DNA of 64,000 bases from Octopus sinensis (GCF_006345805.1 NC_042998.1:163494001-163558000), one strand, 5' to 3'. Positions 1,419 to 63,210 are shown, counted from the first letter of the stretch. Made by a program: numbers and translations. Notes: generated from the letters alone by a model not told the origin.

Positions 1419-2195
1419 AGTATTGCTCTAGGTGTCAAACTCTGAGACATAAAATATTGGTTTACGTATGTAAACCAGTTTACAGTTTTCATTAAGTGTA
1501 GTAAATATTGAATATGGCAAGAAATGAAATGTTCAGTATTGTTATAACCTATACTGTCATTGGTGAATTCAATACACATACATGAAATATATATATATTA
1601 TGTATTGACAGAGAGACAGAGAGCTGTAAATGTCATTGCAGAAGTGAAATTTATTTAAATTTGTACCAGGTTCTTCTTATTTTAATGTCTCTTCCAAAGA
1701 AAAAGAGAGAGAAAAATGAAAATGGAAATTATTTAAATGTTTGTGGTTGCAAAAAAATATAGCTCAGTTGTTAAATTTGTCATCCTTCCATCTCAAATAA
1801 AATGTTTTCTTCCTTTCTGAAAGCAGAGAAAAAGAAAATTATATATTGAACATCAGCAAATGCTAAGTAAAAGAAAAAAACCATTCTGAGTTCTATTATA
1901 TCAAGGTCATCTTAAGAAATTAAATATATTTATTTTTCTCTCTACAGTGAAAAGCTGTAACTCTTATCTTTTCACAAAAGACTAACTTATTTGAATTTGC
2001 CAACATATGAAATTTAATATATACAAATGTGTGTGTGTGTGTACAGAGAGAGACAGAGAGAAAAAGTCCATATTAGTGTGTCAGCATAATTTATAATTTT
2101 GTAAAGTTAACATATTGTTGTTTGAACAAACTTTTATATATATTGTTTTCCTTTTTTATTTTTATTTTGAATTATATATATATATATATATATAT

Positions 2196-2614
2196 CGCGT
2201 GTGTATCGTTGGCGATTTTTTTTCCTGCGTCTTCCCTTCCTTGGGTCTTTCCTCTTCCTATGTTTCTAACGAAGAGCTCCACTTGAAACACTAAATCCTC
2301 CTTCTTTCTTTCCTTTCCTGAGTGTCCAATAACACTATACTTGTTCCACATCCTTGTGTTGTGTTTTCTCTTTGTGTTTTCATGTTTGGATTAACTATAT
2401 ATATATATATATATCGTGTGTGTATCATTGGCAATTTTCTTTCTCTGTCTTCCCTTCTTTGGACATTTTCTATGTGATGCAGAGCTCTGCTCGAAATGTG
2501 AAATCCTCTTTTCTTTCCTTTCCTGAGTGTCCAATAACACTGTACTTATTCCACGTACTCACGTTGTTGTTTTTTCTTGCTTGTTCATGTTTGGATCGAC
2601 TATGTGTATATATA
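2196..2614 (+). mobile_element. Two tandem ~219-bp units, each with a decayed minimal hammerhead-like motif (Penelope/retrozyme-like)
   Basis: Units start at 2196 and 2415 (cg(c/t)gtgtgtatc(g/a)ttggc(g/a)a), share ctttcctttcctgagtgtccaataacact and are separated by (TA)n. Motifs: gttt-ctaacga-a-gagc-tcc-actt-gaaac (2262-2289) and tgatgca-gagc-tct-gctc-gaaa (about 2475-2496). Confidence 0.6.
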
Positions 2615-3919
2615 TCATCATCATCATCGTTTAACGTCCGTTTTCCGCGCTAGCATGGGTTGGACGGTTTGACCGGGGTCTGGGAAGCCAGGGGCTGCTC
2701 CAGGCTCCAGTCTGATCTGGCAGAGTTTCTACGGCTGGATGCCCTTCCTAACGCCAACCACTCCGCGAGTGGAGTGGCTGCTTTTTACGTGCCACCTGCA
2801 CAGGGGCCGGGGGGTCCGGCATCGGTCACGATCGGTTCGAGCTTTTCTAGAGTTGAGTTGGGGGGGGTCCAGCTGAGAAAGGTTCCACCAGTGAAAGAGA
2901 GGGAGAGATAGTGGGGGGGGGGGTGCAGGTAATATAGGGAAGCACCAGTGGGGAAGGTTGGGGTAAGGAGGAACGATGACAGGGAAGGGTTGGTGCAGGT
3001 TCGTAAGAAATAAAAACATAGGATATCACGAGGCGGGGAGGGGACTGGAAGGAGATAGTCGGATTGAGGCAGTGACAGATTCAAAACAGGAGGTAACGTA
3101 AGATCAGTGGGGCGGTTGATGAGCTGCGGCGCTAGCAGCTTGTCTTGGTGGGGGGAAGGGGTAGTACACAGTGAAAGCATGTGAGGAGGAGGGGTAGGAG
3201 GGAGAGACACACGTAATGGTGGTGGGGGAGGAGGAGGGAGGAGGGCATATCCGGTGTAGATGGTGAGAACAGTGTTCACCAGTATTGGTGGTGGTGGTGG
3301 GCGGGCGGGTTCACTGGTATTGGTGGTGGCGGTGGGCGGGCGGGTTCACCGGTATTGGTGGTGGTTTGCACCGCCAAATGGCGGAAAGATGGAATTAAGG
3401 ATTGAAGGTAACCTTAAAGGGTTAAATTTCGTAGAGAAAGATAGGAAAAACAAAGCAAGTTACTGTATGAGTTCAGACATTTAACGGTAGTAACGAATGA
3501 GCAACGAATGAATGTATGTTGTATGAGGTACGGAAGATAAATGAGATAAAATCTTTTTAACTTGCTGTGGACATCAGGCTGGAAGTTGAGTTGGAGAAGA
3601 AGGAAGTTTGAATTGGGGGTTGTAATGGCGATTTTCGGGTTTGAGCAGAAGAAGAAGAAGAAGACATCGCCAAATGGCGGAAAGATGGAATTAAGGATTG
3701 AAGGTAACCTTAAAGGGTTAAATTTCGTAGAGAAAGATAGGAAAAACAAAGCAAGTTACTGTATGAGTTCAGACATTTTACGGTAGTAACGAATGAGCAA
3801 CGAATGAATGTATGTTGTACGAGGTACGGAAGATAAATGAGATAAAATCTTTTTAACTTGCTGTGGACATCAGGCCGGAAGTTGAGTTGGAGAAGAAGGA
3901 AGTTTGAATTGGGGGTTGT
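2615..3919 (-). mobile_element. Composite non-autonomous retroposon, copy 1: 296-bp tandem monomers + C-rich/VNTR middle + RTE-type 3' tail ending in (GAT)n
   Basis: Direct repeat with period 296 (cgccaaatggcggaaagatgg at 3372 and 3668). RTE tail ggatgcccttcctaacgccaacc and a (tca)n end at 2615. Flanked by TA tracts. Homologous along its length to 17331-18597. Confidence 0.8.
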
Positions 3920-5077
3920 TATATATATATATAGATGCATGACTGTAGTTAAGATGATTACAGTTCAATTAGTAAGTTCTAGTGCAACATTTTGGTCATA
4001 TATTTCCAATCATATCCAAATATTGGTTTCAAATTTTGGCACAAGACCAGTAATTTTGGGGAAGGAGTAAATTGATCGCATCACCCTCTGTGTTCAGCTT
4101 GTACTTATTTTATCGACCCTGAATGCATGTAAGGCAAAGTTAACCTCATGGAATTTGAATGCAAATCATAAAGACAGATGAAATGCTGCTCAGCATTTTG
4201 CTTGGTGTGTTAACTATTCTGCCAGCTTGCTGCCTTTATCATATCCAAATATTGATGCAAGCCTTATCTGTGAAGTTTGATAGCTGAGAACTGTGCTGAA
4301 GACCAGTCAATAGACTGACTTCTCATACACTGCATTACACTGTTTTAATCCTAAGTATTATGCTAAGAGTATATCTATGGAATACTCAGCTATTTGCATA
4401 ATAATTCAGTTAATGACTAACTTTATTGATCAAATAATCAAAATGCCAGTTTTCCAAAAATCTATGCAAAATCCATTTTGTTCAATAATTGAGAATATGT
4501 CCATCCATTTTCTCCTGGGAAAATCATAGGGGTAAAATCCTTTGGCACCTTCTTCATTAGAGGTGCCTAGGAGCCCTGGACTCTGGACACTATTAGTTGC
4601 AATCAGAAGCAACCATTAATACACTTCCCAACTGGATTCCCAAACATGACCAACTGAGACCAAGGATATTATCTAACCATCTCGTTCTTCTTCTGTTTCT
4701 GGATCTCCTGCTGGTTGGCTTGGCTTGAAGAATCTGTCTGGCAATTATTTTCTGGCTTTTAATCATAAATCCCTTTGCTAGATCAAGGCCAACCTAGGGC
4801 TAAACAACAGCAACATCTATCTATGTTTTGTGTTCAAATTCCACTGAGGTTAACTTTTTTTTTTATATTATTGGCAGATGTCTGAGAAATAAGTAGTCCT
4901 ATTCAACATTTTCATGTAATTAAATCAGCAATTTTCAACTTGCTCAATTTGAACTCTTGTTTCAAAACAAACTGTACCTGATCATGCCTGACCCTTAAGC
5001 AAACCTCATGATCAGAAGCATTCAAGCCATGACTGTCTTGTTATTGATTTTTTACTATTATTATTTTCTAAAAGGAT

Positions 5078-5297
5078 AAGGCAGCGAACTGGTAGAATCA
5101 TTAGCATACTGGGCAAAATGCTCAGCAGTATTTTGTCCATCATTATGTTCTGAGTTCAAATTCCTCTGAGGTTGACTTTGCCTTTCATCCTTTCGAGGTC
5201 AATAAATTAAGTACCAGTGAAACACTGGGGTTGATGTCATCGACTAGTCCCCTCCCTGGAAAATTTCATGCCTTGTGCCTATAGTAGAAAGGATTAT
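5078..5297 (+). mobile_element. tRNA-derived SINE family B, near full length
   Basis: aaggcagcgaactggtagaatcattagca...ctgagttcaaattcc...gactttgcctttcatcctttcgaggtcaataaattaagtacc...gtagaaaggatta. Confidence 0.85.
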
Positions 5298-5950
5298 TTT
5301 GTTAGATGGTAGAATGTGCTTTTGGATCTTGGATGACATTATCCACTTTCCGTCCACCTATCTTCTCTGTTCACTGTTCCTGGGAGGGTCGTGGAGGTAC
5401 AGTCCTCAGGTGTTTCTTCCATAGGGTCCTATCAGAAACAACCATCACTACAAGGGGGTGCAGGAAAGTTCCCAGCTTTGGGTGAAAGAAAATACAGAAA
5501 GATCAATTATGATTTTATTCAACATATTCGGCTCTCAGATTTATACATTTATTGCAGTAGTCCTTCAGTTTTTCTAAACCCTGTAAAAGAACGCAGAAGG
5601 TTGGGCCTCCAACCAGGCCTTTCACAATACCCTTAAAGCCAGGAACTTTTCAGCCCCTACTCACCTACACTCACTGGTTGGATTATTATGGGTATTATCC
5701 AACCATCTTGTTTAGATTGGCTCAGCTTGAAGAATCTACCTTACAGTTCTTTCCTGCAACATCCTCATCATAGGCACAGGCATGGCTGTGTGGTAAGAAG
5801 ATTACTTTTCTACTACTTGGTTCCAGGTTCAGTCCCGGTGTAGCACCTTGGGCCAGTGTCTTCCACCATAGCCTCAAACTGATCATAGCATTATTGTGAG
5901 TAGATTTGGTAGATAGAAACTTAAAGATATCCATGGTGTGTATGTATGTA

Positions 5951-8909: not shown

Positions 8910-9092
8910 TACTGGTGTCAGTACCTCTTAAAAAGCACCCAATACACTGTAAAGTGGTAGGCATTAGGAAGGACATCCAAGTGTAGAAATCATGTGAAAG
9001 CAAACTACAATTTGGTGCAATCCTCTAGTTCACTAGCTCTTGTCAATCCATCCAACTCATGCCAAGATGGAAAACAGATGTCAAATGATGAT
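8910..9092 (+). mobile_element. RTE 3' tail fragment
   Basis: aaaagcacccaatacactgtaaagtggtaggcattaggaaggacatcc...catccaactcatgccaagatggaaaacagatgtcaaatgatgat. Confidence 0.8.
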
Positions 9093-13570: not shown

Positions 13571-15020
13571 ACTTAAATGTTAAAATGAAACCTAAATAGT
13601 TTTAGAAGTTTTGTGACAAATAGTCGAACTTACTTGAAGCTGGTTGTCAGATTTGACTAATTTTAAACTCTGAATGTCTTCATAGTTGAAATTTTCTGCT
13701 CTATATACCTTCTATACTTCATCAGAGTGTCACGAAAGAATTTTGGTAAATATCTCAAATCTTTATATCTTACTTTAGAACTGTATAATTTGCTATGGCT
13801 TGAGCAAGATTTTCAACTTTCTCTAATTTCATTTCACCTAGATTGAATTAGCTTCTTGGAAAGTTGGTTTGTTGTTATTGTATTGATTGGTTGAATATTT
13901 GCAATAGTTTACTGTGCTCACTTTGTGTATTGTTTAAGTTTACTCATATATGAACTACACAATTATTGAAACTTTTCAGCTATCAAACTTAAATCTTCAT
14001 CTATCATGAATCATAAAGACTAATTTTGCAGTGAAGCAGTAATATTGTCTTTGTAAATGATTGATCATGCTTTTGCTTTTGTATGAATATTCATAGCAAG
14101 AATGGCACCAACATCACATTGCAACATTTTACATATAGGAAAATTAACTAATAATTAAAAACCAATATGCATTAAAGTTATTTACAACAATCTGTGACCA
14201 TTATCATCATCATCATTCAACATTTTCTTTCCATACTGGCATGGGTTGGATGGTTCCACAGGAACTGGCTAACCAGAAGACTGCACCAAGCTCCAATGTC
14301 TGGTTTGGCAAGGTTTCTGTGGCTGAATACCCTTCTTAATGCCAATCACTTTACATATTGTACTGGGTGCTTCTTATGTGACGCTAGCAACAGTAAGGTC
14401 ATGGAACAAATTGCGAAACAAGACCCCTTGACTGAGTGGGGAGTTGTATTAAGGGATAGAAATGGGTATCTTGCAGTAAAGGAGAAACATGGCTACCTCA
14501 GGTGGAGAAAGAGTGATGGGAGAGAGATAGAGGAGAGAAATAATTAGGTGGTGATGTTACGAGGTGTACATCCAAGTTACAAGGTGGTATGTAATGAAGT
14601 TAATGGGAAATTGGAGGGGGTGAATGGGTGGGTGAATCCTCAATATTGCAAAAGGAGAATAGGAAATGGGGCACAGGTAGTGGGAGGAGGTATTCATATT
14701 ATTTAAGCAACTGATTCAATGAAATGCTGTAAGGATATATAGTTATCTTGTTGTTTTTTATTATCTCTGATCAAATAAACTTGTATAATGTGTGGATGTG
14801 TAATAGTTATGTAGCCCCAAGTCAGCCCTGTTCAAGCAGCTTTGAGATTTCAATGGTTTGACTGTTCATATTTAGAATGGCACTGTAGGGTAAGTGCAAG
14901 AAGTCAGATATGGATAGGTTGAACTTAAAACATGTAAAATATCTGGGCCAGATATGTCGGCTTAAATGCTAAAGGGTTAAACTTCCTGTATTGTTATTTT
15001 CATTATTGCTATAATGTGAG

Positions 15021-15230
15021 AAGTCAGTGCGCTGGCAGAATCGTTAGCAAGCCAGGCAAAATGCTAAGCAGCATTTCATCCATCCTTATGTTCTGGATTC
15101 AAATTCCACCGGGGTCAACTTTGCCTTTCGTCCTTTTGGGACCAATAAAATAAGTACTGGTTGAGTACTGGGGTTGATGTAATTGACTTAGCCCCTCCCC
15201 AGAATTCCAGGCCTTGTGCCCATAGTAGAA
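15021..15230 (+). mobile_element. tRNA-derived SINE family B
   Basis: gctggcagaatcgttagca...ggattcaaattccaccggggtcaactttgcctttcgtccttttggg...ccttgtgcccatagtagaa. Confidence 0.85.
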
Positions 15231-17112
15231 TTAATCTTACTGCTATGTGAGATGACATCTAAACCCTAAGCTATAATATACTGCATTGTTATCTTGAAAG
15301 GAATCCTACTTTATACTAATCACTAATGAATGAGACCCATTCACTCCCTATGTACCATAGAAATTGCATTCCTTCTAAGTCAGGTGAACAGTCATTGATG
15401 TGTCTGTCTGTCTGGCTGGCTGGCTGTCCTAAAGAGAAAATAAGCAAATCGTAAAATAAATATCAAAGACTTAATGAGTCTATTTTTAGATTATGAACTC
15501 TGAGTTTGGCAGTTAACCAACGCTTTTAGTGATACAAAATTGTTTAGTCTGGTGAAATAAATTCATTGTGAGGAAATAAATGCAATTACGGAAAATACAT
15601 TCTATTGGACAATAATAAGTTGATTTACTTCAGCTAAAACGTTGATACCGCTTAATTAATTTTGAGACAGTTTTGGTAGTTAGTTACACAAGAATCAGCA
15701 GGAACCTTCTGTCCATTTCTGATAAATACACATACATAATATAACTTATACAATATATATATATACATACAAATATATATATATGGCACATAGTTTTTAC
15801 ACTATACGTATATAAGTTGTGTACTAGTGGTACAATTCACCTGTAATTCAGTTTGGATATGTGATGTTGATAAGCCATGTAAATGGTGAAGCATTGATGT
15901 CCATTACTCTTGAATGGGATTTGGGGTGAGTTGTCCTGCCTGTCTATGACTTTAAGGTATTTTAACACCCAGGGTTTTGAGGGTGTATTTTCACCACACC
16001 ATGCCAAATCACTGCCTACCAGCAAATACACAAGACATGGGGGATTAAGTATGTGTGGTTGATAATATATATATTAATGTCCATTTTCTATGTTGGCATG
16101 GGTTGGATGGTTTGACCGGAGCTGGTAAAGCCAGATGTTACACGAGGCTCCATTATCTGTTCTGGTATGATTTCTATGACTGGATGCCCTTCCTAACACC
16201 AACCACTCCACATAGTGTTCTGAGTGCTTTTTACTTAGCACCAGCTCTGGCATCAATGCTGCAGTGGCAGACAGGATATATATATATATATCTTGGTTTA
16301 TTAATATTCAAAAGAAAATTTAGAAAATGGATATTACTATCCCTTAATGAGGCTATTTTAACCTTTAATTGAATGTATATATATATATATTTATAATCCA
16401 TATTAAATTAAGAGAAGAAAATGGAGAGTTAGTGGTTAATATTTATTTATTAATACATTATAATCATTTCTTCCTATAGCTGTTTCCATTTGTACTCATT
16501 GAATAAATTACAGATATTGCCTTAAATTTGCATTTATAAGTTATGAGCAAAATATCATCAAGAAAAAGTTAGAAATTGAAAAACAAGTTTTTATGCCATT
16601 TATTCCTTGATATATATATATATATTCATACATATACATGCACACATAGTATATACTGATATATATATATACGCATACATGCATTAATATGCATATACAT
16701 ATGTATTTTATTTTTTATGGTGTCCGGTCAATTCGTCGACTGCAATTGATCTCCAGTCAATTCGCCGTTGATCAATTCTTCCTCTGGTCAATTTAAGGTT
16801 GTGTGCAATTGCTTTTAGAAAAATAATTTTTTTCGCTTGGATCATATTCTTCCATGACATTTTTTATACACAGGTTCATATCTCTGTATTTTTACTTATG
16901 GCTTGGTTCTTCTTGCATAAACTTCTGCAAACCTTTCCTCACATTTACTCAAATTAATAAAATTTGGATGACTAATATTCACTCTCCTGTGGTAGGTTTC
17001 AAAACTATTTGTAGTAGGAGCAATCCTTGTCATACACTGATCCCAAACATTCCATATAGGTAATAGAAACGGAGGTTCAAGGCTTCACCTCCTCTGTCCT
17101 CTTCTTCTAGGT

Positions 17113-17294: not shown

Positions 17295-17330
17295 CTCTAG
17301 GTGGTCCTATATAATTATTTTTAAAATATA

Positions 17331-18597
17331 TTTTTTTATTCGTTGTTAATACGTTTATTCATACACTGTTACGAAAATTTAACCTTTTTTAAGATACTTT
17401 CAAGCCTTCGCCATAACTGATTTATCTTCCTATCTCTCTCTCTCTACAATATTTAACCGCAGGCTGCCTCAAGCCGTAATCCCATCTTTTTCCCATCTTT
17501 CAGTCATTGGCGGTCTTCTTTTTCCTCCTCTTCTTCTTCATATGCTAAAACTTGAAAACCGCCATTACTATTACTATTACGATTCTGCAATTTAAATTCC
17601 CAGTTCAACTACTTTCTTCTTCAATTTCAACTCCCGCTCGATGACCGCAGCAAGTTCTTAAAAAATTTATCTTACTATATTTTTTTATTCGTTGTTAATA
17701 CGTTTATTCATACACTGTACGAAAATTTAACCTTTTTTAAGATACTTTCAAGCCTTCGCCATAACTTGATTTATCTTCCTATCTCTCTCTCTACAATATT
17801 TAACCGCAGGCTGCCTCAAGCCGTAATCCCATCTTTTTCCCATCTTTCAGTCATTGCGGTGCGCCCGCCCCCCCACCCCCACCACCAATACCGTTGAACA
17901 CTGTTCTCACCCCCACCACCAATACCGTTGAACACTGTTCTCACCCCCACCACCAATACCGTTGAACACTGTTCTCACCCCCCCCACCACAATACCAGTA
18001 TACCCCGTTCTCTCTATCTACACCGGATACACCTTACTATCATCTACACTGGGTACGCCTACTCCTCCTCCTCCTCCCACTACCACTTCTCCTCATATGC
18101 TTAAGACAAGCTGCTAGCGCCATAGCTCATCAACTGCCCACCGATCTTACGCTTCCTCCTGACACTGCCTCAATCCGACCATCCCCTTTTAGTACCCTCC
18201 GCCTCGTCACCTACCCATTCTAAGTACCCCACTACCCATTCTAAGTACCCCCTACCCATTCTAAATACCCCGGATCCCCAAAGTACCCCGGATCCCCAAA
18301 ATACCCCAGTCCCCAAAGTACCAACCGGACTCGTGCCCCCGTGCCGCTGACACGTTAAAATGCTCGAATCCGATCGTGACGATGCCGGACCCTCCGGCCC
18401 CTGTGCAGGTGGCACGTAAAAAGCACCCAATCCACTCACGGAGTGGTTGGCGTTAGGAAGGGCATCCGCCGTAGAAACTCTGCCAGATTCAGACTGGAGC
18501 CTGGAGCGGCCCCTGGCTTCCCAGACCCGGTCAAACCGTCCAACCCGTGCTAGCGCGGAAAGCGGACGTTAAACGATGATGATGATGATGATGATGA
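17331..18597 (+). mobile_element. Composite non-autonomous retroposon, copy 2: 349-bp tandem monomers + VNTRs + RTE-type tail, nested in the MULE ORF
   Basis: Direct repeat with period 349 (ttcgttgttaatacg at about 17339 and 17688). ~33-bp VNTR x3 at 17880-17990; ~21-bp and 18-bp VNTRs at 18200-18320. Tail ends ggacgttaaac(gat)n. Removing it rejoins the MULE reading SIV-(S)-YFKNNYIG. Confidence 0.85.
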
Positions 18598-19904
18598 TAC
18601 AATTGACTGTGGAATAGCATCATCATCTACAAGTTGTTCATATCTATCTACATCATCATCAATTAGCAGGAAGGCGAGGGCAAAAAAATACTGCATTTTT
18701 AGACTATAACTGTCATCTTCGTGATATCTGGATTTTAGTCCTTCTTGTACATGCTTGTACACATTTTGTCCTAAATGAAACAAGCAGCATGCCAAATTCA
18801 ATTGTGGAGCATTAAAATTATCAATTTGATATAACTGAAAATATACTAGAGCAGCACTTGAATGTTCCATCTGCCACCCAGTTCTTGTGCTGTTTTAACT
18901 GTCAAAGTCCTTCATCACTTGCAAATATTTGTATTCATTTTGAATCTTCCATCCCACTGTCATACTGTAAAAACGTTTCATCATTGTCAAGGTAGGAGTA
19001 TTCACTTGGAATGGAAAACCCAACATTTGTAACTGGGGTGGCAAGATAGTTGGGATCAGCTTGCCTCCAACGTCTAATATTCCTATGAAGCTATGCAAAC
19101 GGAGCTATTTGGGACAATGTACTGTCATTTAAATTCTGAACTTCGCTAGCGATAATTGAGCAAGGGGCATCACAAGATGAAATAAACTTTACTTTAATAT
19201 TTGAAACTATTATTCTTGCATTTACCTCTGCAGCAGTTGAAGTGTGATTATGGATCCCAATCTTCTTAAAGTCTTTATAATTTTCATCTGTTTGAAGTCT
19301 CATCTTGCACACACGATTTTCGCATCTCCAGTATATCTTCAGTCCATTTGCATTCTGCTAATTTTTTGTGTATATGTATAATTTTCTTGATCGACCACTT
19401 TGATTTTTATTTTCTCTGAAGTTATGATCTTGCAGATAGTCATGTTGATGGGTAAGCGTACTGAATATATTTAATTCGATTTGCTTGAAAATGTTTGTAA
19501 ACTGTTCAGTGCAGATACTTGAGAAAGTGAGAGAGAGAGGGTGGCAGGTGTTAAAGTAAGGAAAAATATATCTAAAACTGTCCAATGACAATTTTAATTC
19601 TAAAGTGATTGTTCCAAACTTTTTCCTCGAAAATCACATTTAAGAATATTTTGGAACAAATTGGTCAGTGACGAATTGACCTGGAGATGAATTGAACAAT
19701 GACAAGTTGAGTGGGGACAAATTAACCAATGACAAAATAACTGGGGACGAATTGTCGTAGCACCTTTTTTACATACATATGTGTGTATATGTGTGTGTGT
19801 ATGTGTGAAGAAAAGATTCCAGGTTTTTCTTGGTCAATAGGTTCATAAGGCTGGTTTCCAGATTTTGTGACATATGTATATATGTGTGTGTGTGTCAGTA
19901 ATGT

Positions 19905-21257
19905 CTAGAATCGAAGGGCCTTAGAGTCAATCTAGCAAATACCAAAGTCATAATAAGTAGGAAGGCAGACAAATTACATTCCTTCAGGTAGATGGCCCTG
20001 CTCGATCTGTAGACAAGGCATTGCTAGAAACTCCATAAGATGTACCCAGCATAAGTTATGGACACATAAGAGGTGCAGCAATATCAAAGGAAGGCTAACT
20101 GGGAAGATAGTTTTTGTGTGTGGCAAATGCTCGGGGGCAATAAACACTGAAAATTTACATAAAACAGCTTCCGTCACATACCAGGAGGAAAAACTAGAAG
20201 TAGTTGGTAGCTTCCATTACCTAGGTGGCCAAGTCAGTAGCAGGGGTAACTGCTCTGAGAGTGTAACTGCTAGATTAAGAATAACCTGAGCAAAGTTTAG
20301 AGAGCTCCTACCTCTGCTGGTGACAAAGGGCCTCTCACTCCGTGTAAAAGGTAGACTGTATGATGCATGTGTGCAAACAGCCATGCTACATGGTAGTGAA
20401 ACATGGGCCATGACTGCTGAGGGTATGTGTAAGCTTGCAAGGGATGAAGCTAGTATGCTCTACTGGATGTGTAATGTCAATGTGCATACACGACAGTGTG
20501 TAAGCACCCAAGCATCAGATGTGGTGTGCAAGAGAAATGAGTGCACTGGTATGGTCATGTGTTGCGTATGGATGAGGACAGCTGTGTGAAATAGTATCAC
20601 ACCCTAGAAGTAGAGGGAACCTGTGGAAGTGGTAGGCTCAGGAAGACCTGCGGTGAGGTGGTGAAGCATGACCTTCAAACATTGGGCCTCATGGAGGCGA
20701 TGACAAGTGACTGAGACCTTTGGAGATATGCTGTGTTTAAGAAGACCCCGTGAGCCAAGTGAGACCATAACCATGGCCTATGCCAGTGCAGCATAAAGGC
20801 CCATTTAAGAGTACCCTTCAATCATTGGGCAATAAACTGCACTTGTGAAGACCTGTTGAGTCAAGTGAAGTCATTGTCAGGACCAATGACAGTACCACCT
20901 GAATGGCACCCGTACCGGTGGGACATAAAAAGCACCATTCTAGTGTGGTCGATCCCAGTGCTACCTGACTGGTCCCATGCCAGTGGCACATAAAATGCAC
21001 TATTTGAGTATGGTCATTGCCAATACACCTGACTTGCTCCCATGCCTGTGGCACATAAAAAGTACCATTCAAGCATGGTCGATGCCAGTACTGCCTAACT
21101 GGCCCTCGTGCCAGTGGCACTTAAAAAGCACCCACTACAGTCTTGGAGTGGTTGGCATTAGGAAGGGCATCCAGCTGTAGAAACATTGCCAGATCAGACT
21201 TGCCAGCCCTCAGTCAAACCATCCAACCCATGCCAGTATGGAAAGCAGACGTTAAAC
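19905..21257 (+). mobile_element. 5'-truncated RTE/RTEX-type LINE (end of the RT domain, C-terminal domain and 3' UTR)
   Basis: LESKGLRVNLANTKV..., PSGRWPCSICRQGIARNSIRC...WTHKRCS, FHYLG, KGLSLRVKGRLYDACVQTAMLHGSETW, GRLRKT; 3' UTR with gtgccngtggcac repeats and the tail. Confidence 0.9.
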
Positions 21258-21640
21258 GGCCGCCCCGTCTGGCCTCCGTGCCGGTGGCACGTAAAAGCAC
21301 CATCCGTTCGTGTCCGCTGCCAGCCTCACCTGGCCCCCGTGCCGGTGGCATGTAAAAGCACCATCCGTTCGTGTCCGTTGCCAGCCTCGCCTGGCCCCCG
21401 TGCCGGTGGCACGTAAAAGCACCATCCGTTCGTGGCCGTTTGCCAGCTCTGTCTGGCACCTGTGCGGGTGGCACGTAAAAAGCACCCACTACACTCACAG
21501 AGTGGTTGGCGTTAGGAAGGGCATCCAGCCATAGAAACACTGCCAGATCTGACTGGGCCTGATGAAGCCTTCCGGCTTCACAGACCCCAGTTGAACCATC
21601 CAACCCATGCTAGCATGGAAAACGGACGCTAAATGATGAT
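21258..21640 (+). mobile_element. Second, younger RTE 3' UTR/tail inserted directly at the end of the previous LINE; 61-bp repeats x~4
   Basis: CpG-intact repeats ccgtgccggtggcacgtaaaagcaccatccgttcgtg, ending ggacgctaaatgatgatgat. Confidence 0.85.
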
Positions 21641-21641
21641 G

Positions 21642-21697
<56 letters not shown>

Positions 21698-32804: not shown

Positions 32805-33103
32805 ATGAGTGAGATCGTTGCCAGAGCAACAAGCTGGCCTTCGTGCCGATGGCACATTAAGCACACCATTCAAGCATGATCGTTACCGTGTCGCCTTACT
32901 AGCACTTGTGCTGGTGGCATGTGAAATATTCAAGCGAGGTCGTCCCAGTGCCGCTGGGTGTGGTCGTTGCCAGTACCACCAAACTGGCCCTCGTGCCAGT
33001 GGCACATAAAAGCACCCACTACACTCTCGGAGTAGTTGGCGTTAGGAAAGGCATCCAGCTGTAGAAACTCTGCCAGATCAGACTGGAGTCTCGTTCACCA
33101 GAC
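32805..33103 (+). mobile_element. RTE 3' UTR/tail fragment
   Basis: gtgccgatggcac repeats, aagcacccactacactctcggag, ggacgttaaatgatgatgat. Confidence 0.85.
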
Positions 33104-33258
33104 CTCAGTCAAATCATCTAACACATGTTAGCATGGAAAGCGGACGTTAAATGATGATGATGATACATATTATTTATTTAAAGGACACAATGCATGTTTT
33201 TAAGTGCTACTAATACTTTCAGTCATTTTATTGATCTTTCTATCATCGAACAGTACAT

Positions 33259-33372: not shown

Positions 33373-33480
33373 GTGTTTGACTCCAGCAGTACATATTCTA
33401 ATATTGGAACGATGCAGAGACAATTAGCATGGCCCCTGTGCAAGGATGACATGCAAATTTGTGAAGTGGTCCTTATTTTT
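33373..33480 (+). pseudogene. RNU6: U6 snRNA pseudogene, full length
   Basis: cagtacatattctaatattggaacgatgcagagacaattagcatggcccctgtgcaaggatgacatgcaaatttgtgaagtggtccttattttt aligns to U6. The ACAGAGA box is altered to GCAGAGA, CpG decay occurs throughout, and there is no TATA at about -30. Confidence 0.9.
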
Positions 33481-37182: not shown

Positions 37183-39139
37183 AACTCAGTTGAGGGGAGT
37201 TATGTCTTGTGTGTACTTGTTGACCTCAATAGTGTTGGTGCCACACAAAAAGCATCCAGTGCACTCTGTGAAGTTGTTTGTGTTAGGAAGAGCATCCAAC
37301 CATAGAAATCCTGCCAAAGGAAGACACTGGAATTTAGTGCAGTCCTCTAACTTGCCAGTTCCTGTCAAACTGTTCAACTGGTGCCAGCATGGAAAGCAGA
37401 TATTAATGATGATAATGATGATATGTATACTGACAATCTATGTTACCCAGTAGTATTTGACCAGTCTAAAACTAAGAACTCATTGATTGACAAGTTTGCT
37501 CAGTTGGATTTCAATGTTTGATAGAATTATGTGAGCAATATTTCAAAAGCCAAGGTGGCAAGCTGGCAGAATTGTTAGCACCCTGGACGAAATGCTTAGC
37601 AACATTTCATGTCTTCATGTTCTGAGTTCAAATTTTGCTGAGGTTGACTTTGCCTTTCATCCTTTCAGGGTCAATAAAATAAGTGCCTGTTGAACTCTGT
37701 AATTGTCTTATCCGCTGCCCCAAAATTGCTGGCCTTGTGCCAAAATTTGTTGTCAACTGATGCCAGCATAGAAAACAGCTGTTAAATGATGATAATGAGG
37801 AAGAAGCATATACTAACAATCTGTGTTACCCTTCACTATTTGATCGGTCTAAAATTAAGAGCTTATTGCTTGAGGAGTTTGTTTAGTTGGATTTCAGTGT
37901 TTTATAGAGCTGTGTGAGCAATATTTCAAAAGCCTCTGGTGCTCTTTTGTGCTGATGGATTGTGAAACTAATATTTGTTCTAGTTGCTGTTGTTGTTGTT
38001 CAACTGCAGATTATCCCTGATTCACAGACCTGTGAGCAAGCAAAAGTATTACATTCGTGACTGACTAGCTTCTGTTATTTTCTTTTTTCAGTCATAAATT
38101 ATCTAGCACTAGCTTATTTGATGTGTCATTATTGCATTTGTTGTTATTGTTGTTGTAGTTGCTGTTTAATCCCAGATCAGCCTTGATTGAACAAATCTAT
38201 AATTGAAGATGTTCCAGCTTTGACCATTCCATCAATTTCTATGTATAGGACTTCTTTTCTCCTAATGTGTCCTTCTTATTAACAACAAGGAGATTTGACT
38301 ACTCTTTCATGCAAGTCCACCGGCCACATAGAAGGTCCTAGTTGCCCTGTTTTGTTAACTGCTTCACTACATGGTGAACTGAAGAAAATAGAATAAGCTG
38401 GTAATTAGCACTCCAAAATATATACACCAGCAACTCATTAGTAACACAACACAAATGGTTATTGAAATAATGGAAAGCAATGTTATATAATATTGTCCGT
38501 CTTTACAAATTAGGCTAAACTGCCTGCTTTAAATGTTCTCTCCGTTTGGTTTTCACTCAGCATTCTGGATTAGTTTCTTGATAAATTGAACTATTAAGAA
38601 TGCATGAGAGGAGATCTTGAGGGATAAAGTATGTTAGAGAAATTCCTGAAAAGTAGAGAAAACGAAATCAGAGCTAGCTGAACTAGTAGCAGATAAATTC
38701 TGTAGCCTGAGAGGGTAGCAAAAATGGTTCACGAGAGTCCTTGCATCTATGGATAGCTACTATCTTTAGTGTGAGGCAATCATAAAAACATTTCTTGTTA
38801 CATTCCATAAAATCAATTGGCATTAGCCAGAGTAGTCATCCATGAAATCTCTTGCACTAACGGACACAGCCAGGCAGCCAACCAGCCAGCCGGCCAGCCA
38901 AACAGGGAGCCTACCTACCTATCTACCTACCATCCAACTGATCAACCAACCAGCCATCCAACCAACCAACCGACCAACTGACAAAGCCACTGAAGCATAG
39001 CAAAATGAAAATGGATATTGAAGACTAGTTAAAATTATATTCATTGCTGCCATTTTATCTGCTGCTGGAAAGTTTTATTAGATTAATATTTACTCTAATT
39101 TTGATCTCTGTTTAGGTATTTCTGTTGTTTCTTTGCTAT

Positions 39140-40239: not shown

Positions 40240-40781
40240 TTTAGCTGGCACATTTGTTAGCATGCTGGATGAAATACGCAGCAACACTTTGTTCATCTTT
40301 ATGTTCTGATTTCAAATTCCGCCTAGGTTGACTTTGCCTTCCATCCTTTCAGAATCGATGAATTAAGTAGCAGTTGCGCATTGGGGTCGATGTAATTGAC
40401 TATCCTCCATACCCAAAGTTTCAGGCTTTGTGCTTATAGTAGAAAGGATTATTATTATTATTATTATTAGACTGGCTTCCGTGCCAGTGGCACATAAAAC
40501 AGCACCATCCGAACGTGGCCGATGCCAGCGCCGCTTTGACTGGCTTCCATGCTGGTGGCACATAAAAAGCACCAATCCGATCGTGGCTGTTGCCAGCCTC
40601 GCCTGGCACCTGTGCCGGTGGTACATAAAAAGCACCCACTACACTCTTGGAGTGGTTGGTGTTAGGAAGGGCATCCAGCTGTAGAAACACTGCCAGATCA
40701 GACTGGAGCCTGGTGCAGCCTTCTGGCTTCCTAGATCCAACCCATGCTAGCATGGAGAACGGACGTTAAACGATGATGATG
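40240..40781 (+). mobile_element. SINE family B (40240-40446) with an RTE 3' UTR/tail (40468-40781) inserted in its (ATT)n tail
   Basis: Family B core, then (tta)n, then actggcttccgtgccagtggcac...ggacgttaaacgatgatgat, then (tta)n resumes. Confidence 0.85.
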
Positions 40782-41249
40782 ATTATTATTATTGAGTGAG
40801 AGAGCAGTGCATGCCATCAAAGTGACACTGGGGTAAAATATACGAAGCCCAGTATACCCATCATGGCTACCTGTCTGGTATATTGCTGAGGGTCTTGGTC
40901 ACCTGTCATTGCATCTATAAGGCCCAACACTCGAATAGTGCTTTAAGTCTGTAGAATACTCAACCACTGATTCACAAATTCAATGAGCTTGATAGTTTAG
41001 TCACTTGAACATTGGGACACTTGATAGACATTCCAGCTGAGTTCCATTCCCTTTATTGTGTGTATATGTGTTAGCTGCAAGAAAAAACAGTAGAGAGGAG
41101 ACAGCATATATATTTGGAAGGGTATCTAACTGTAAAAACCATGCCAAAACAGACATAGAAGTCTGGTACAGGCTCATGCCTGTTCAGCTCCTGTCAAACT
41201 ATCCAGCCCATGCCAGCATGGAAGGCAGACATTAACGATGATGATGATA

Positions 41250-46226: not shown

Positions 46227-47268
46227 TCATCATCATCATCATCATCGTTTAACGTCCGCTTTCCATGCTAGCATGGGTTGGACGGTTCAACTGGGGTCTG
46301 GGGAGCCCGAAGGCTGCACCAGGCCAGTCAGATCTGGCAGTGTTTCTACAGCTGGATGCCCTTCCTAACACCAACCACTCCGAGAGTGTAGTGGGTGATT
46401 TTATGTGCCACCGACACAGGTGCCAGACGAGGCTGGTGAACGGCCACGCTCGGATGGTGTTTTTATGTGCCACCGACACAGGTGCCAGACGAGGCTGGCA
46501 GACGGCCACGCTCGGATGGTGTTTTTATGTGCCACCGACACAGGTGCCAGACGAGGCTGGCAGACGGCCACGCTCGGATGGTGTTTTTATGTGCCACCGA
46601 CACAGGTGCCAGACAAGGCTGGCAGACGGCCACGCTCGGACGGTGTTTGTTACGTGCCCACAGCACGGAGGCCAGTCGATGCGGTACTGGCTACGGTCCC
46701 GTTCGGATGGTTTTCTTATGTGCCACCGGCACTGGTACCACAAGGATACAAATTCCATTGATGTTCATCTATTTTGATTTGGTTTGACTTGATTCGATTT
46801 GACTTTGATTTGATTTGCCTCAACAGGTCTTCACAAGTGTCACAAGCAGGAAGGTATGCACAGGCGGACTGACTACGTCCCAGGTAGGGGCCACGGGTTA
46901 TGGCTTCACTAGTCTTGCCGGGTCTTCTCACGCACAGCATACTTCCATAGGTCTCGGTCTCTGGTCATTTGGTCATTTCCATGGTGAGACCTAATGTTCG
47001 AAGGTCGTGCTTCACCACCTCGTCCCAGGTTTTCCTGGGTCTACCTCTTCCACGGGTTCCCTCAACTGCTAGGAATTGGCACTTTCTCACACACCTATCT
47101 TCATCCATTCTCGCCACATGACCATACCATCGCAATCGTCTCTCTTGCACGCAACAACTGATGCTTCTTAGGTACAACATTTCTCTTAGGGAACTAACAC
47201 TCTGTCGAGTAAGTACACTGACATTACACATCCATCGGAGCATACTGGCTTCATTCCTCATGAGCTTA
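46227..47268 (-). mobile_element. 5'-truncated RTE/RTEX LINE with 62-bp x4 repeats in the 3' UTR
   Basis: ORF 46965-47261 RNEASMLRWMCNV...ERRLRWYGHVARM...GTRGRGRPRKTWDEVVKHDL; repeats at 46401-46645; (gat)n tail. Confidence 0.92.
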
Positions 47269-48659
47269 TGTATGTCCTATATATATATATATATATATAT
47301 ATATTTCATTTTGACATAAATAATGTGCATGTGTGTATGTTTGTCCCCCTGTCTGCCACTTGGCAAGTAGTGTTGGTTTGTTTTCATCCCTGTAATGTAG
47401 TTCAGCAAAAGGGACTAATAAAATAAGTACAAGGCTTAAAAAATAACTCGTAGGAGTGATTTGTTTCATTAAACCTTTCAAGACAGTGCCCCAGTGTGGC
47501 CACAGTCCAAGTCAAAGATACACTACCATCATCATTATCACTTAACATTTGTTTTCCATGCTGGCATGGGTTGGATAGTTTGAGAGGGGCTGGCAAGCTG
47601 GAAGGCTGAACCAGGCTCCAGTCATCTGTTTTGTCATGGTTTTTACAGCTGGATGCCCTTCCTTACACCAACCACTTTGCCAAGTGTACTGAGTGCTTTT
47701 AACATGGCACTGGCACGGGTGCTTTTCATGTGGCACAGGCATAGGTGTTCTTTTTAAATAGCACCAGTACCCACAGGGTTGCCAAGTAGCTTGCAAGGCA
47801 GGATGTTTACCAAAGACAGGAAAGTCAAAACAGTGACACCTTTGATCCTAACACTAATTTTATCAGAGTCAGTCAGGTATGACAATTTGAAACTACAAAT
47901 TCATAGTCTCCATCTATCCAACAAGGTAGAAAAACCAAGTGATTAAAGTGCCATTAAACAGATCCCAGGGGTCAAATCTCATCATGTGACCCTTGAGGCA
48001 GATGATACTTTTAAACAAGGCCAGGCCAGATGACAGATTGTTTACTTCCTGGAATGAATGGTCTTGGAGATTGCTTTCCATTCAACTTCTATTTATCTTT
48101 TGTGTTTTACTTGTGGCCATGCTGGGGCACCACCTTGAAGAATTTAGTCAAATGAATTGACCCCAGTTCTTTCCATCCAAAATAGTGTATTTAGGATGAC
48201 ACTATCTGAGATACCTTTCCTATATTAAAGCATCGGGGTGTGATTTAAGGGAGATATTGCAGCTATTTCTAGCAGGTTCAATGACAGGCAATGTATAGGG
48301 ACTCCCACATTGATAAGTAGAAAATATTGGATGAATTAGTAGATACCTTTTGATCTCTCCAAATGCAAATGAAAGTGTCAGTTGATGAAGAAAAAAAAAA
48401 GTTGCAGCTAAAATTGATAGTGGCTGTTCACTTAACGCCATCCCATAATATGTACATAAGATCACATGTTAACTGACTAGTATGAATTCTGCAAGTGAGC
48501 ATGATGGCATATTGGGTAAAATATAAAAAAAGTCAAATAAGTAAGAAAAAATATTTATTTTGTATTTTTTTAAATTTTACATTTTTTTCTTTTTATTCTA
48601 TTATTAACAATTTTTTTTTTTCCTTTTTTTTCTAATTTCCAAAGTGATGTTCTTGTAGA

Positions 48660-62589: not shown

Positions 62590-63210
62590 ACTTGCTTCAA
62601 TCATAGGACTGCAGTTGTGCTGAGGAACCAGTTTGAAGGATTTTAGTTAAACAAATCAACCCCAGTACTTTCTTGTTTTTAAACCTGATATGTATTCTAT
62701 CTGTCTCTTATGCTAGATTGCTAATGCTGTGAACAAACCAACACCATTTGTCAAGCAGTAGTGAGGGACAAACACAAAGACACACACACACATGCACACA
62801 CATATATGTATATATGTATGTACAAAAGCACCCAGGCCAGTGCCATGTAAAAGCACCTATACTGGTGCCAGTACCACATAAAGGCACCCAGTACACTCTG
62901 GTTGGCATTAGAAAGGGCATCCAGTCATAGAAATCATGCCAAGGCAGACAAATGGAGCCTGGGCTGCTCTCCAGCTGGCTGACTCCTGTTGTCAAACCAA
63001 CCAACCCATGCCAATATGGAGAATGGATGTTGAAAGATGATGATGATGATGATATTTATATACAATGAGATTCTTTCAATTTCCATCTACCAGTTCCATT
63101 CACAAGGCCTTGGTTGGCCCGAGGCTATAGTAGTAAACACTTGCTCAAAGTGCCATGCTGTGAGACTAAACCTGCAACTATGTGGCTGGGAGGGGAACTT
63201 CTTACCACAC
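62590..63210 (-). mobile_element. Old SINE family A with an RTE tail (62821-63052, plus) inserted in its central microsatellite
   Basis: 3' half to ggacaaacacaaagacacac, then aaaagcaccc...ttagaaagggcatccag...gatgatgat, then caatttccatctacc...ccacacagccac. Confidence 0.75.

What the first reader, a model, noticed from the sequence alone, without database searches (positions are those of the whole stretch)
2615..3919. Composite SVA-like non-autonomous retroposon family (copy 1; copy 2 at 17331-18597)
Seen: two diverged elements 15 kb apart in opposite orientations share one architecture. It consists of 5' tandem monomers (296 and 349 bp, 5'-truncated within a monomer), a C-rich middle with its own VNTRs and shared blocks (aacactgttctcacc, gacaagctgctagcgcc, ctgcctcaatccgac), and an RTE 3' tail. 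Both tails carry the same diagnostic variants (gctagcgcggaaa, ccgtagaaactctgcc, cctgtgcaggtggcac), which I did not see in the other RTE tails of this window. There is no RT or endonuclease coding sequence and no tRNA head. Established: mouse L1 uses 5' tandem monomers as a Pol II promoter, and SVA is a VNTR-containing composite mobilised in trans. Inference: a Pol II-driven, RTE-mobilised composite family with at least two subfamilies, either a new retroposon type or an internally deleted RTEX derivative.
Basis: partly seen in the sequence, partly recalled or inferred. Interest (0 to 1): 0.72.

Follow-up and report, generated by a model that had tools for sequence, protein, structure and literature searches.

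The report
Octopus RTE-tailed non-coding retroposon, two copies
Two diverged copies of a 1.3-kb non-coding repeat in an octopus genome end in a piece copied from the resident RTE-type LINE, so they are probably non-autonomous passengers of that LINE; this is a real but fairly ordinary kind of element, and its proposed own promoter is untested.

Summary
Window 2615-3919 (minus strand) and 17327-18598 (plus strand) are collinear copies of one dispersed repeat with unrelated flanks. Each has 1.5-1.9 tandem monomers (296 and about 346-349 bp), a homologous 34/35-bp VNTR, a C-rich middle with exact shared blocks, and about 250 bp copied from the 3' UTR of the resident RTE-type LINE. That LINE-derived part ends in (GAT)n.

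The two tails are each other's nearest relatives among 30 tails (97% identity against at most 92%). The bodies are only 78-81% identical, which points to two subfamilies.

Nothing in the bodies codes for a protein, and no small-RNA head was found.

The window is Octopus, because the tail ORF hits O. vulgaris proteins. No further body copy was found in the rest of the window or in 100 kb of O. vulgaris. No whole octopus genome or repeat library could be searched.

Two points stay open. Both copies start at different phases inside a monomer, so the true 5' end is unknown. An ORF further upstream, which would make this a truncated LINE with a long 3' UTR, cannot be excluded.

The Pol II promoter role of the monomers rests on analogy, plus T-runs that argue against Pol III.

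Verdict: partly supported. It is a new member of a known kind and of modest interest.

The parts
2615..2628 (-). Copy 1: terminal (GAT)n microsatellite, the 3' end of the element
   Evidence: TRF ATC x5 at 2614-2628. All RTE-type tails in the window end this way.
2629..2872 (-). Copy 1: part copied from the RTE-type LINE 3' UTR (about 1.6-2 units of the 62-bp UTR repeat plus the 190-bp tail). It includes the two-tier terminal hairpin at 2635-2666.
   Evidence: Alignment to LINE-attached 3' UTRs, tail alignments, hairpin pair counts, coordinates.
2873..3273 (-). Copy 1: C-rich non-coding middle with the shared blocks GACAAGCTGCTAGCGCC (3128), CTGCCTCAATCCGAC (3058) and AACACTGTTCTCACC (3262)
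   Evidence: No protein or Pfam similarity.
3274..3365 (-). Copy 1: 35-bp VNTR, 2.6 units, homologous to the 34-bp VNTR of copy 2 (shared core CACCACCAATACCG)
   Evidence: TRF, alignment at 78.5% identity, motif positions.
3369..3664 (-). Copy 1: full 296-bp monomer
   Evidence: Self-BLAST and TRF, period 296. 78% identical to the copy 2 monomer.
3665..3919 (-). Copy 1: upstream partial monomer (255 bp, lacking the first 41 bp), which is the 5' end of the copy. Flanked by (TA)n, with a possible TSD of TATATATA.
17327..17514 (+). Copy 2: partial monomer (about 184-188 bp), the 5' end of the copy. No clear TSD.
17515..17860 (+). Copy 2: full monomer (346 bp, period 349)
17874..17989 (+). Copy 2: 34-bp VNTR, 3.4 units
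   Evidence: TRF. Homologous to the copy 1 VNTR.
17990..18209 (+). Copy 2: C-rich middle with the shared blocks (18105, 18165)
18210..18322 (+). Copy 2 only: 20-bp x3 and 18-bp x3.2 tandem arrays. This region has no alignable counterpart in copy 1.
   Evidence: TRF. Alignment score no better than shuffles.
18335..18574 (+). Copy 2: part copied from the RTE-type LINE 3' UTR (about 2 x 62-bp units plus tail). Terminal hairpin at 18537-18568, with a compensatory A-U to G-C change.
18575..18598 (+). Copy 2: terminal (GAT)8
   Evidence: TRF.
46233..47300 (-). Reference: 5'-truncated LINE copy with ORF C-terminus (..RLRWYGHVARMDEDR..GRGRPRKTWDEVVKHDLRTLGL..DRDLWKYAV), about 150 bp unique UTR, at least 5 x 62-bp repeats, tail and (GAT)n. 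It shows where the tail comes from.
19957..21258 (+). Reference: a second LINE 3' fragment with an ORF C-terminus followed by 62-bp repeats and the tail

Best explanation
These are two independently inserted, probably 5'-truncated members of one non-coding retroposon family of Octopus. They represent two subfamilies, and the family is at least 1.3 kb long.

The 3' end of the family is about 250 bp copied from the 3' UTR of the resident RTE-type LINE. It consists of two 62-bp UTR repeats, the 190-bp tail with a small terminal stem-loop, and (GAT)n.

Inferred mechanism: the LINE's reverse transcriptase recognises this 3' end on the element's RNA and copies it into new sites by target-primed reverse transcription. 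This is how SINEs and other passengers that share a LINE's tail are mobilised.

The rest of the element carries no protein and no small-RNA-derived head. It consists of tandem monomers of about 300-350 bp, a 34/35-bp VNTR and a C-rich spacer.

The RNA is most likely made by Pol II, either from a promoter in or upstream of the monomers or by read-through. That step is inference only.
For: SHOWN
- The two copies are collinear over all parts and their flanks are unrelated. They are therefore dispersed copies and not a segmental duplication.
- The 3' part is homologous to the 3' UTR of copies that carry a LINE ORF C-terminus and ends in the same (GAT)n.
- The homology to the LINE stops sharply at 2872 and 18335. 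Upstream of those points there is no similarity to the 0.9-1.3 kb of LINE sequence present in the window.
- The two tails are nearest neighbours among 30 tails (96.9% against at most 91.8%) and share changes not seen in the other 28.
- The tail is much better conserved between the copies (93-97%) than the body (78-81%, partly unalignable). This fits selection on the part needed for mobilisation.
- The terminal two-tier hairpin is kept: 91% of cells are paired in 29 tails, and the covariation score exceeds 499 of 500 shuffles. Copy 2 has a compensatory change.
- No coding capacity or RNA head was found.
- The monomer array has the same phase and the same 3' boundary in both subfamilies, so the tandem structure is ancestral to the family.
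- Monomers within a copy are 97-98% identical, which suggests young insertions.
- T4-T7 runs in every monomer of the sense strand argue against Pol III.

ESTABLISHED KNOWLEDGE
- SINE/LINE pairs share 3' tails, and RTE elements end in short tandem repeats (PMC6007223, PMC2887409, PMC9115989).
- RTE-BovB is strongly expanded in octopus (PMC8967140).
Against: - Only two copies are known, and both lie in one 15-kb stretch. None was found in the other roughly 48 kb of the window or in 100 kb of O. vulgaris, which holds 30 ordinary tails.
- Both copies start inside a monomer at different phases. The real 5' end, and so the absence of an ORF, is not established.
- TSDs are weak. Copy 1 has TATATATA inside a (TA)n tract, and copy 2 has none that is clear.
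- Folding energies of the terminal hairpin are not better than shuffles for single sequences.
- Some apparent covariation may come from paired CpG decay.
- The clade of the LINE (RTE) rests on C-terminal motifs, the (GAT)n end and the literature. No RT domain linked to this tail was available to test.
Confidence: 0.55

Rival explanations
1. Both copies are ordinary 5'-truncated copies of an autonomous RTE-type LINE subfamily. In that subfamily the 3' UTR would be unusually long (over 1.3 kb) and repeat-rich, the ORF would lie upstream of the monomer array, and the 'monomers' would simply be 3'-UTR tandem repeats.
For: - This LINE already carries tandem repeats (62-bp units) in its 3' UTR.
- Both copies begin at different positions inside a monomer, as random truncation predicts.
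- Truncated RTE copies have been mistaken for SINEs before (PMC2887409).
Against: - In the LINE copies of this window the ORF stop lies only about 150 bp upstream of the 62-bp repeats. That 150-bp unique UTR and the ORF end are absent from the 1 kb upstream of the repeats in both copies.
- Both of the two tails that carry the diagnostic variants extend to nearly the same length (1.27 and 1.31 kb), while most other tails in the window are cut within 200-400 bp.
Confidence: 0.25
2. It is an internally deleted derivative of the RTE-type LINE. The monomers and middle would be that LINE's own 5' UTR, joined to its 3' UTR after loss of the ORF.
For: - The 3' part is certainly LINE 3' UTR.
- Deleted LINE derivatives are common (established knowledge).
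- RTE-2_OV has a 5' UTR of about 600 nt (PMC9115989).
Against: - No 5' end of any RTE copy was available to compare.
- The body is about 1 kb or more, longer than the reported 600-nt 5' UTR.
- There are no ORF remnants at the junction.
Confidence: 0.1
3. It is a low-copy chimera. A host transcript or an unrelated tandem-repeat locus was fused to an RTE tail by template switching and retroposed only a few times, giving a retropseudogene-like product rather than a self-sustaining family.
For: - Only two copies were seen in 164 kb, against 48 ordinary tails.
- No promoter evidence exists.
Against: - The two copies differ by about 20% in the body, yet each has 97-98% identical internal monomers and a well-kept tail.
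- That pattern implies two long-lived source lineages, not one accident.
Confidence: 0.07
4. The copies are not mobile. The two loci would be an old local inverted duplication, with the tails later homogenised by gene conversion.
For: The copies are 15 kb apart and in inverted orientation.
Against: - 500-bp flanks on all four sides share no similarity.
- Each copy ends exactly at the (GAT)n of an RTE tail.
- The unequal divergence of tail and body does not fit simple duplication.
Confidence: 0.03

Closest known systems
SINEs and other passengers that share the 3' tail of an RTE-clade LINE (for example Bov-tA/Bov-A2 with Bov-B, Sauria SINE, plant Au-like SINEs)
   Same: The 3' end is copied from the partner LINE and ends in the LINE's short tandem repeat. 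There is no coding capacity. Mobilisation in trans is presumed to work through recognition of the tail.
   Different: No tRNA, 7SL or 5S head was found. The element is at least 1.3 kb long. Internal T-runs would stop Pol III. It has a large tandem monomer array and a VNTR.
Hominoid VNTR composite retrotransposons (SVA, LAVA, PVA, FVA)
   Same: Non-coding and kilobase-sized, with a variable internal tandem-repeat domain, a pyrimidine-rich repeat motif near the 5' side, and dependence on a LINE in trans. They are probably Pol II transcripts.
   Different: There is no shared sequence. The partner is an RTE-type LINE recognised through a specific tail, not L1 through poly(A). The parts other than the tail cannot be traced to known repeats. 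The family is known here from two copies only.
Mouse L1 5' monomer promoters (A, Tf, Gf types)
   Same: Tandem monomers of a few hundred bp lie at the 5'-most part. Copies start inside a monomer. Monomers are homogenised within a lineage but diverged between lineages.
   Different: No ORF follows. Promoter activity is untested. The two copies start at different monomer phases.
5'-truncated RTE LINE copies (the common 3' fragments of RTE elements)
   Same: Same tail, same (GAT)n end, and variable 5' ends.
   Different: The 1 kb upstream of the 62-bp UTR repeats is unrelated to the LINE's ORF end and unique UTR as seen in the same window.

Membership tests
LINE-tail-sharing non-autonomous retroposon (broad sense) | 3' end homologous to the 3' end of a resident LINE, including its terminal repeat | tested here: met
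   About 250 bp are shared with 3' UTRs that follow a LINE ORF C-terminus.
LINE-tail-sharing non-autonomous retroposon (broad sense) | No reverse transcriptase or endonuclease ORF in the full-length element | tested here: inconclusive
   None is present in the 1.0 kb of body of either copy. Both copies look 5'-truncated, so the full-length form is unknown.
LINE-tail-sharing non-autonomous retroposon (broad sense) | Many dispersed copies with target-site duplications | tested here: inconclusive
   There are two copies with unrelated flanks. The TSD is weak for copy 1 and absent for copy 2. No further copy was found in 164 kb. No octopus genome could be searched.
Canonical SINE | 5' head derived from tRNA, 7SL, 5S or snRNA with an internal Pol III promoter | tested here: inconclusive
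   ARAGORN found none and Rfam E-value scans found none. However, the true 5' end may be missing.
Canonical SINE | Short (under about 600 bp) and free of internal Pol III terminators | tested here: not met
   The copies are 1305 and about 1270 bp, and every monomer has T4-T7 runs on the sense strand.
SVA-type VNTR composite | Central VNTR whose unit number differs between copies | tested here: met
   The homologous 35-bp x2.6 and 34-bp x3.4 arrays, plus arrays found only in copy 2.
SVA-type VNTR composite | Assembled from Alu-like and SINE-R (HERV-K) parts, with AATAAA and a poly(A) end and L1-type insertion | tested here: not met
   There is no AATAAA or ATTAAA on the sense strand and the end is (GAT)n. 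The body matches nothing known.
Autonomous RTE-clade LINE | Single ORF with AP-endonuclease and RT domains | tested here: not met
   This holds within the two copies. There were no hits in the six-frame search or in Pfam.
Autonomous RTE-clade LINE | The partner LINE of this tail belongs to the RTE clade by RT phylogeny | not testable with these tools
   Only ORF C-termini are linked to the tail in the window, and Pfam gave only a sub-threshold PHD match. The clade is inferred from the C-terminal motifs, the (GAT)n end and the literature (PMC8967140, PMC9115989).
Monomer-promoter 5' end (mouse L1 type) | Monomers drive Pol II transcription | not testable with these tools
   No expression data are available. 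The 0.4 Mb of O. vulgaris transcriptome text held for PMC9115989 has no match to the body motifs.

The most novel reading that the evidence does not exclude
This is a self-sustaining, Pol II-transcribed passenger of the octopus RTE LINE. Its tandem monomers act as its promoter and its VNTR varies between copies. That would make it an invertebrate, RTE-based counterpart of SVA/LAVA with mouse-L1-like promoter monomers. It would have at least two recently active subfamilies.
Probability: 0.18. Interest if true: 0.55.

Novelty: new member of a known kind. Interest (0 to 1): 0.3.

Why it matters
RTE-type LINEs are the most expanded LINEs in octopus and have been proposed to be active in the octopus brain. 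Knowing which non-coding passengers use their machinery helps in three ways: it helps interpret TE expression and new insertions, it keeps passengers from being counted as LINE activity, and it improves repeat libraries. About 900 octopus SINE-like families are still unclassified in those libraries.

A kilobase-sized, headless passenger with its own monomer array would also be a useful independent case for asking how such composites gain a promoter and keep a LINE-recognition tail under selection. As it stands, the element is one more LINE-tailed non-coding repeat.

Tried and rejected
1. Fishing for other copies through predicted proteins.
- I searched the 164-aa middle ORF and a 2384-aa join of all stop-free stretches of both bodies in six frames with the word-indexed search. 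I also ran a full HMMER scan of representatives.
- Nothing came back except one spurious bacterial-type repeat protein, P0006.
- The database holds only annotated octopus genes, so this negative result is weak evidence about copy number but good evidence against coding.

2. DNA pattern scans.
- I scanned JGI metagenomes with a body pattern and a tail-variant pattern and IMG/VR with a generic tail pattern. All were empty.
- The IMG/VR scan used a generic tail pattern and was empty, so that collection evidently holds no octopus DNA. The two JGI patterns were specific to this family and had no positive control. All three negatives are therefore uninformative about copy number.

3. Five O. vulgaris loci (100 kb) fetched around tail-derived 'hypothetical proteins'.
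- They contain 30 tails and no body copy by BLAST or nhmmer profiles.
- The single weak hit, L005:18731-18911, is low-complexity CCACCA sequence.

4. Supplementary files of PMC9115989 (a 0.4-Mb piece of transcriptome) and of PMC13282606 gave no match and hold no repeat library.

5. Segmental duplication is rejected because the flanks are unrelated.

6. tRNA, 5S, 7SL, snRNA and hammerhead origins are rejected for the part present. The snoRNA and miRNA hits at 18575-18661 are sub-threshold matches to the (GAT)n region.

7. RNAalifold's own long-range consensus for the tail was not adopted. The local two-tier hairpin was tested instead.

8. AATAAA absence on the sense strand is not significant given the base composition.

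Full report
WHAT IS THERE

The window is eukaryotic, AT-rich and full of (TA)n and (CA)n tracts. It has one U6 snRNA and no tRNA. The antisense ORF of the tail hits only 'Hypothetical predicted protein [Octopus vulgaris]' entries at 76-87% identity. Tails in the window are up to 95% identical to tails in O. vulgaris chromosomes. The window therefore comes from Octopus. The species was not determined.

Copy 1 lies on the minus strand at 2615-3919. Copy 2 lies on the plus strand at about 17327-18598.

In sense orientation each copy has:
- a partial monomer, then a full monomer. In copy 1 these are 255 + 296 bp and 98.4% identical. In copy 2 they are about 184 + 346 bp, with period 349, and 97.3% identical.
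- a 35-bp x2.6 or 34-bp x3.4 VNTR with the shared core CACCACCAATACCG.
- a C-rich spacer (44-45% C, 10-11% G) that holds the exact shared blocks.
- the LINE-type tail ending in (GAT)n.

Copy 2 also has 20-bp and 18-bp arrays that copy 1 lacks.

Identity between the copies, segment by segment:

| Segment | Identity between copies |
|---|---|
| Monomers | 78% (score 208 against 79 +/- 9 for shuffles) |
| VNTR region | 78.5% |
| Conserved middle | 81%, with many gaps |
| 3' third of the middle | not alignable |
| LINE-derived part | 93% |
| 190-bp tail core | 96.9% |

The monomer arrays have the same phase and the same 3' boundary in both copies. The tandem arrangement is therefore an ancestral feature of the family and not two local accidents.

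WHERE THE TAIL COMES FROM

The tail occurs about 18 times in the window and 30 times in 100 kb of O. vulgaris.

At 46233-47300(-) and 19957-21258(+) the tail follows a LINE ORF C-terminus. The motifs there are ..RLRWYGHV.RMDEDR..GRGRPRKTW.EVVKHDL..LGL..DRDLW.YAV. After the ORF come about 150 bp of unique UTR and several 62-bp tandem units. From my own knowledge these C-terminal motifs and the trinucleotide end are typical of RTE/Bov-B LINEs. The literature reports that RTE-BovB is the LINE most expanded in octopus, and that octopus RTE-2_OV has a microsatellite-rich 3' UTR (PMC8967140, PMC9115989). No RT domain linked to this tail was available, so the clade was not tested here. Pfam gave only a sub-threshold PHD match.

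Aligning both copies with LINE-attached UTRs shows that LINE homology starts at 2872 in copy 1 and at 18335 in copy 2. That corresponds to about two 62-bp units plus the tail, and homology stops sharply there. Upstream of that point neither copy resembles the LINE's unique UTR or its ORF end.

Among 30 tails the two copies are each other's nearest neighbours, at 96.9% against at most 91.8% for any other. They alone carry GCTAGCGCGGAAA and CCGTAGAAACTCTGCC. The third 'diagnostic' string also occurs once in O. vulgaris, at L003:10145.

A two-tier stem-loop (CGTCC..CCATG-ctag-CATGG..GGACG) lies about 15 nt before (GAT)n. It is paired in 91% of cells across 29 tails, and its covariation score exceeds 499 of 500 shuffles. 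Copy 2 carries a compensatory A-U to G-C change within the family-specific GCGCGG variant, and copy 1 has an A.C mismatch. Single-sequence folding energies are not better than shuffles, and paired CpG decay could mimic some of the covariation. I treat the hairpin as modest support for a recognition structure.

WHAT THE BODY IS NOT

- ARAGORN finds no tRNA.
- Rfam E-value scans of both copies give only sub-threshold snoRNA and miRNA matches on the (GAT)n region.
- The 164-aa ORF across the middle of copy 1 has no relatives. The one hit, P0006, is an unrelated repeat protein.
- A six-frame join of both bodies has no relatives.
- Pfam finds nothing.

The body is non-coding and has no recognisable small-RNA head or ribozyme.

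IS IT MOBILE, AND HOW?

The four 500-bp flanks share no similarity. This excludes a segmental duplication, which at the body's roughly 20% divergence would still be detectable.

Each copy ends exactly at the LINE tail's (GAT)n. Copy 1 sits in a (TA)n tract with a possible TATATATA duplication. Copy 2 has no clear TSD. An ordinary tail copy at 40465-40783 shows a clean (ATT)n duplication.

The tail is far better conserved between the two subfamilies than the body is. This is what one expects if source elements must keep the part that the LINE's reverse transcriptase recognises.

Monomers within each copy differ by 1.6-2.7%. The calibration quoted in PMC13282606 is a Jukes-Cantor distance of 0.09 for about 25 My. 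With that rate, and assuming the monomers were identical at insertion, the insertions are at most about 2-4 My old. This is a rough inference.

Every monomer has T4-T7 runs on the sense strand, so a full-length Pol III transcript is unlikely. Pol II transcription, either from the element itself or by read-through, is the likely source of the RNA. Nothing here tests a promoter.

WHAT REMAINS OPEN

The two copies begin at different monomer phases. Copy 1 lacks the first 41 bp of a monomer, and copy 2 starts about 100 nt further into the unit. This looks like 5' truncation, so the real 5' end is unknown. An ORF upstream of the monomers cannot be excluded.

This LINE already has tandem repeats in its 3' UTR. 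Truncated RTE copies have also been mistaken for SINEs before (PMC2887409).

Against that rival, the ordinary LINE copies here place the ORF stop only about 150 bp before the 62-bp units, and that stretch is missing from both copies.

Copy number is unknown. BLAST and nhmmer profiles of the body find only these two copies in the window plus 100 kb of O. vulgaris. Finding two copies 15 kb apart and none elsewhere is unexplained.

The public collections reachable here gave nothing on octopus DNA. The IMG/VR scan used a generic tail pattern and was empty; the two JGI metagenome patterns were family-specific, so they had no positive control. The curated O. vulgaris library is on Zenodo and was not readable. 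That paper lists 893 recently active 'unclassified SINE' families, so this family may already sit unnamed in a library.

COMPARISON AND VERDICT

It works like a LINE-tail-sharing passenger. It fails the definition of a canonical SINE on length and on internal T-runs. It is not a member of the SVA group, because it has no shared parts and no poly(A). It does share SVA's general logic of a non-coding, VNTR-bearing, LINE-dependent element. The resemblance to mouse L1 monomers is structural only.

I rate it as a new member of a known kind. Interest is about 0.3. The more novel reading, a promoter-bearing SVA-like passenger of RTE, has a probability of about 0.18.

Noticed in passing
window 33373-33480 (+): A full-length U6 snRNA match (89 bits, model positions 1-105) lies about 210 bp downstream of an RTE-type tail at 32986-33164. 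It could be a real U6 gene or a U6-derived retrocopy or SINE. 'U' SINEs are listed for O. vulgaris in PMC13282606.
   Followed up: no
window 21101-21643 (+): An RTE tail ends at 21258 without (GAT)n. It runs straight into four 62-bp UTR units and a second complete tail. This is either a head-to-tail pair, with a new copy inserted at the end of an older one, or an internal tail duplication.
   Followed up: partly
L001 3683-4359 (-), O. vulgaris OX597840.1: Five or more tandem copies of a 137-bp unit made from the last 128 bp of the RTE tail, at about 90% identity to the query tail. This looks like a small tail-derived satellite.
   Followed up: no
window 2144-2615 (+): The sequence next to the 3' end of copy 1 is itself a tandem repeat of about 205-218 bp at 77% identity. 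The repeat ends at the (TA)n tract where copy 1 is inserted.
   Followed up: partly
window 4020-4240, 1000-1404, 5078-5299, 15031-15220, 37552-37749, 40296-40433; many sites in L001-L004: A very abundant repeat of about 200 bp, unrelated to the RTE tail and 70-84% identical between copies, occurs dozens of times in 164 kb. It is probably one of the major octopus SINEs.
   Followed up: no
window 19957-20286 (+): The LINE ORF fragment upstream of the tail contains a cysteine-rich stretch (CSICRQG..CTQHKLWTHKRCS..FVCGKC) with a sub-threshold PHD-finger match (E 0.024, 15 bits against a cut-off of 24). This is unusual for a textbook RTE ORF.
   Followed up: partly
window 8929-9092, 14203-14380, 16074-16245, 37237-37421, 47527-47722, 53858-54028, 62880-63049: An older class of the same tail, only 69-76% identical to the young tails. 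It shows that this LINE 3' end has been in use for a long time.
   Followed up: partly
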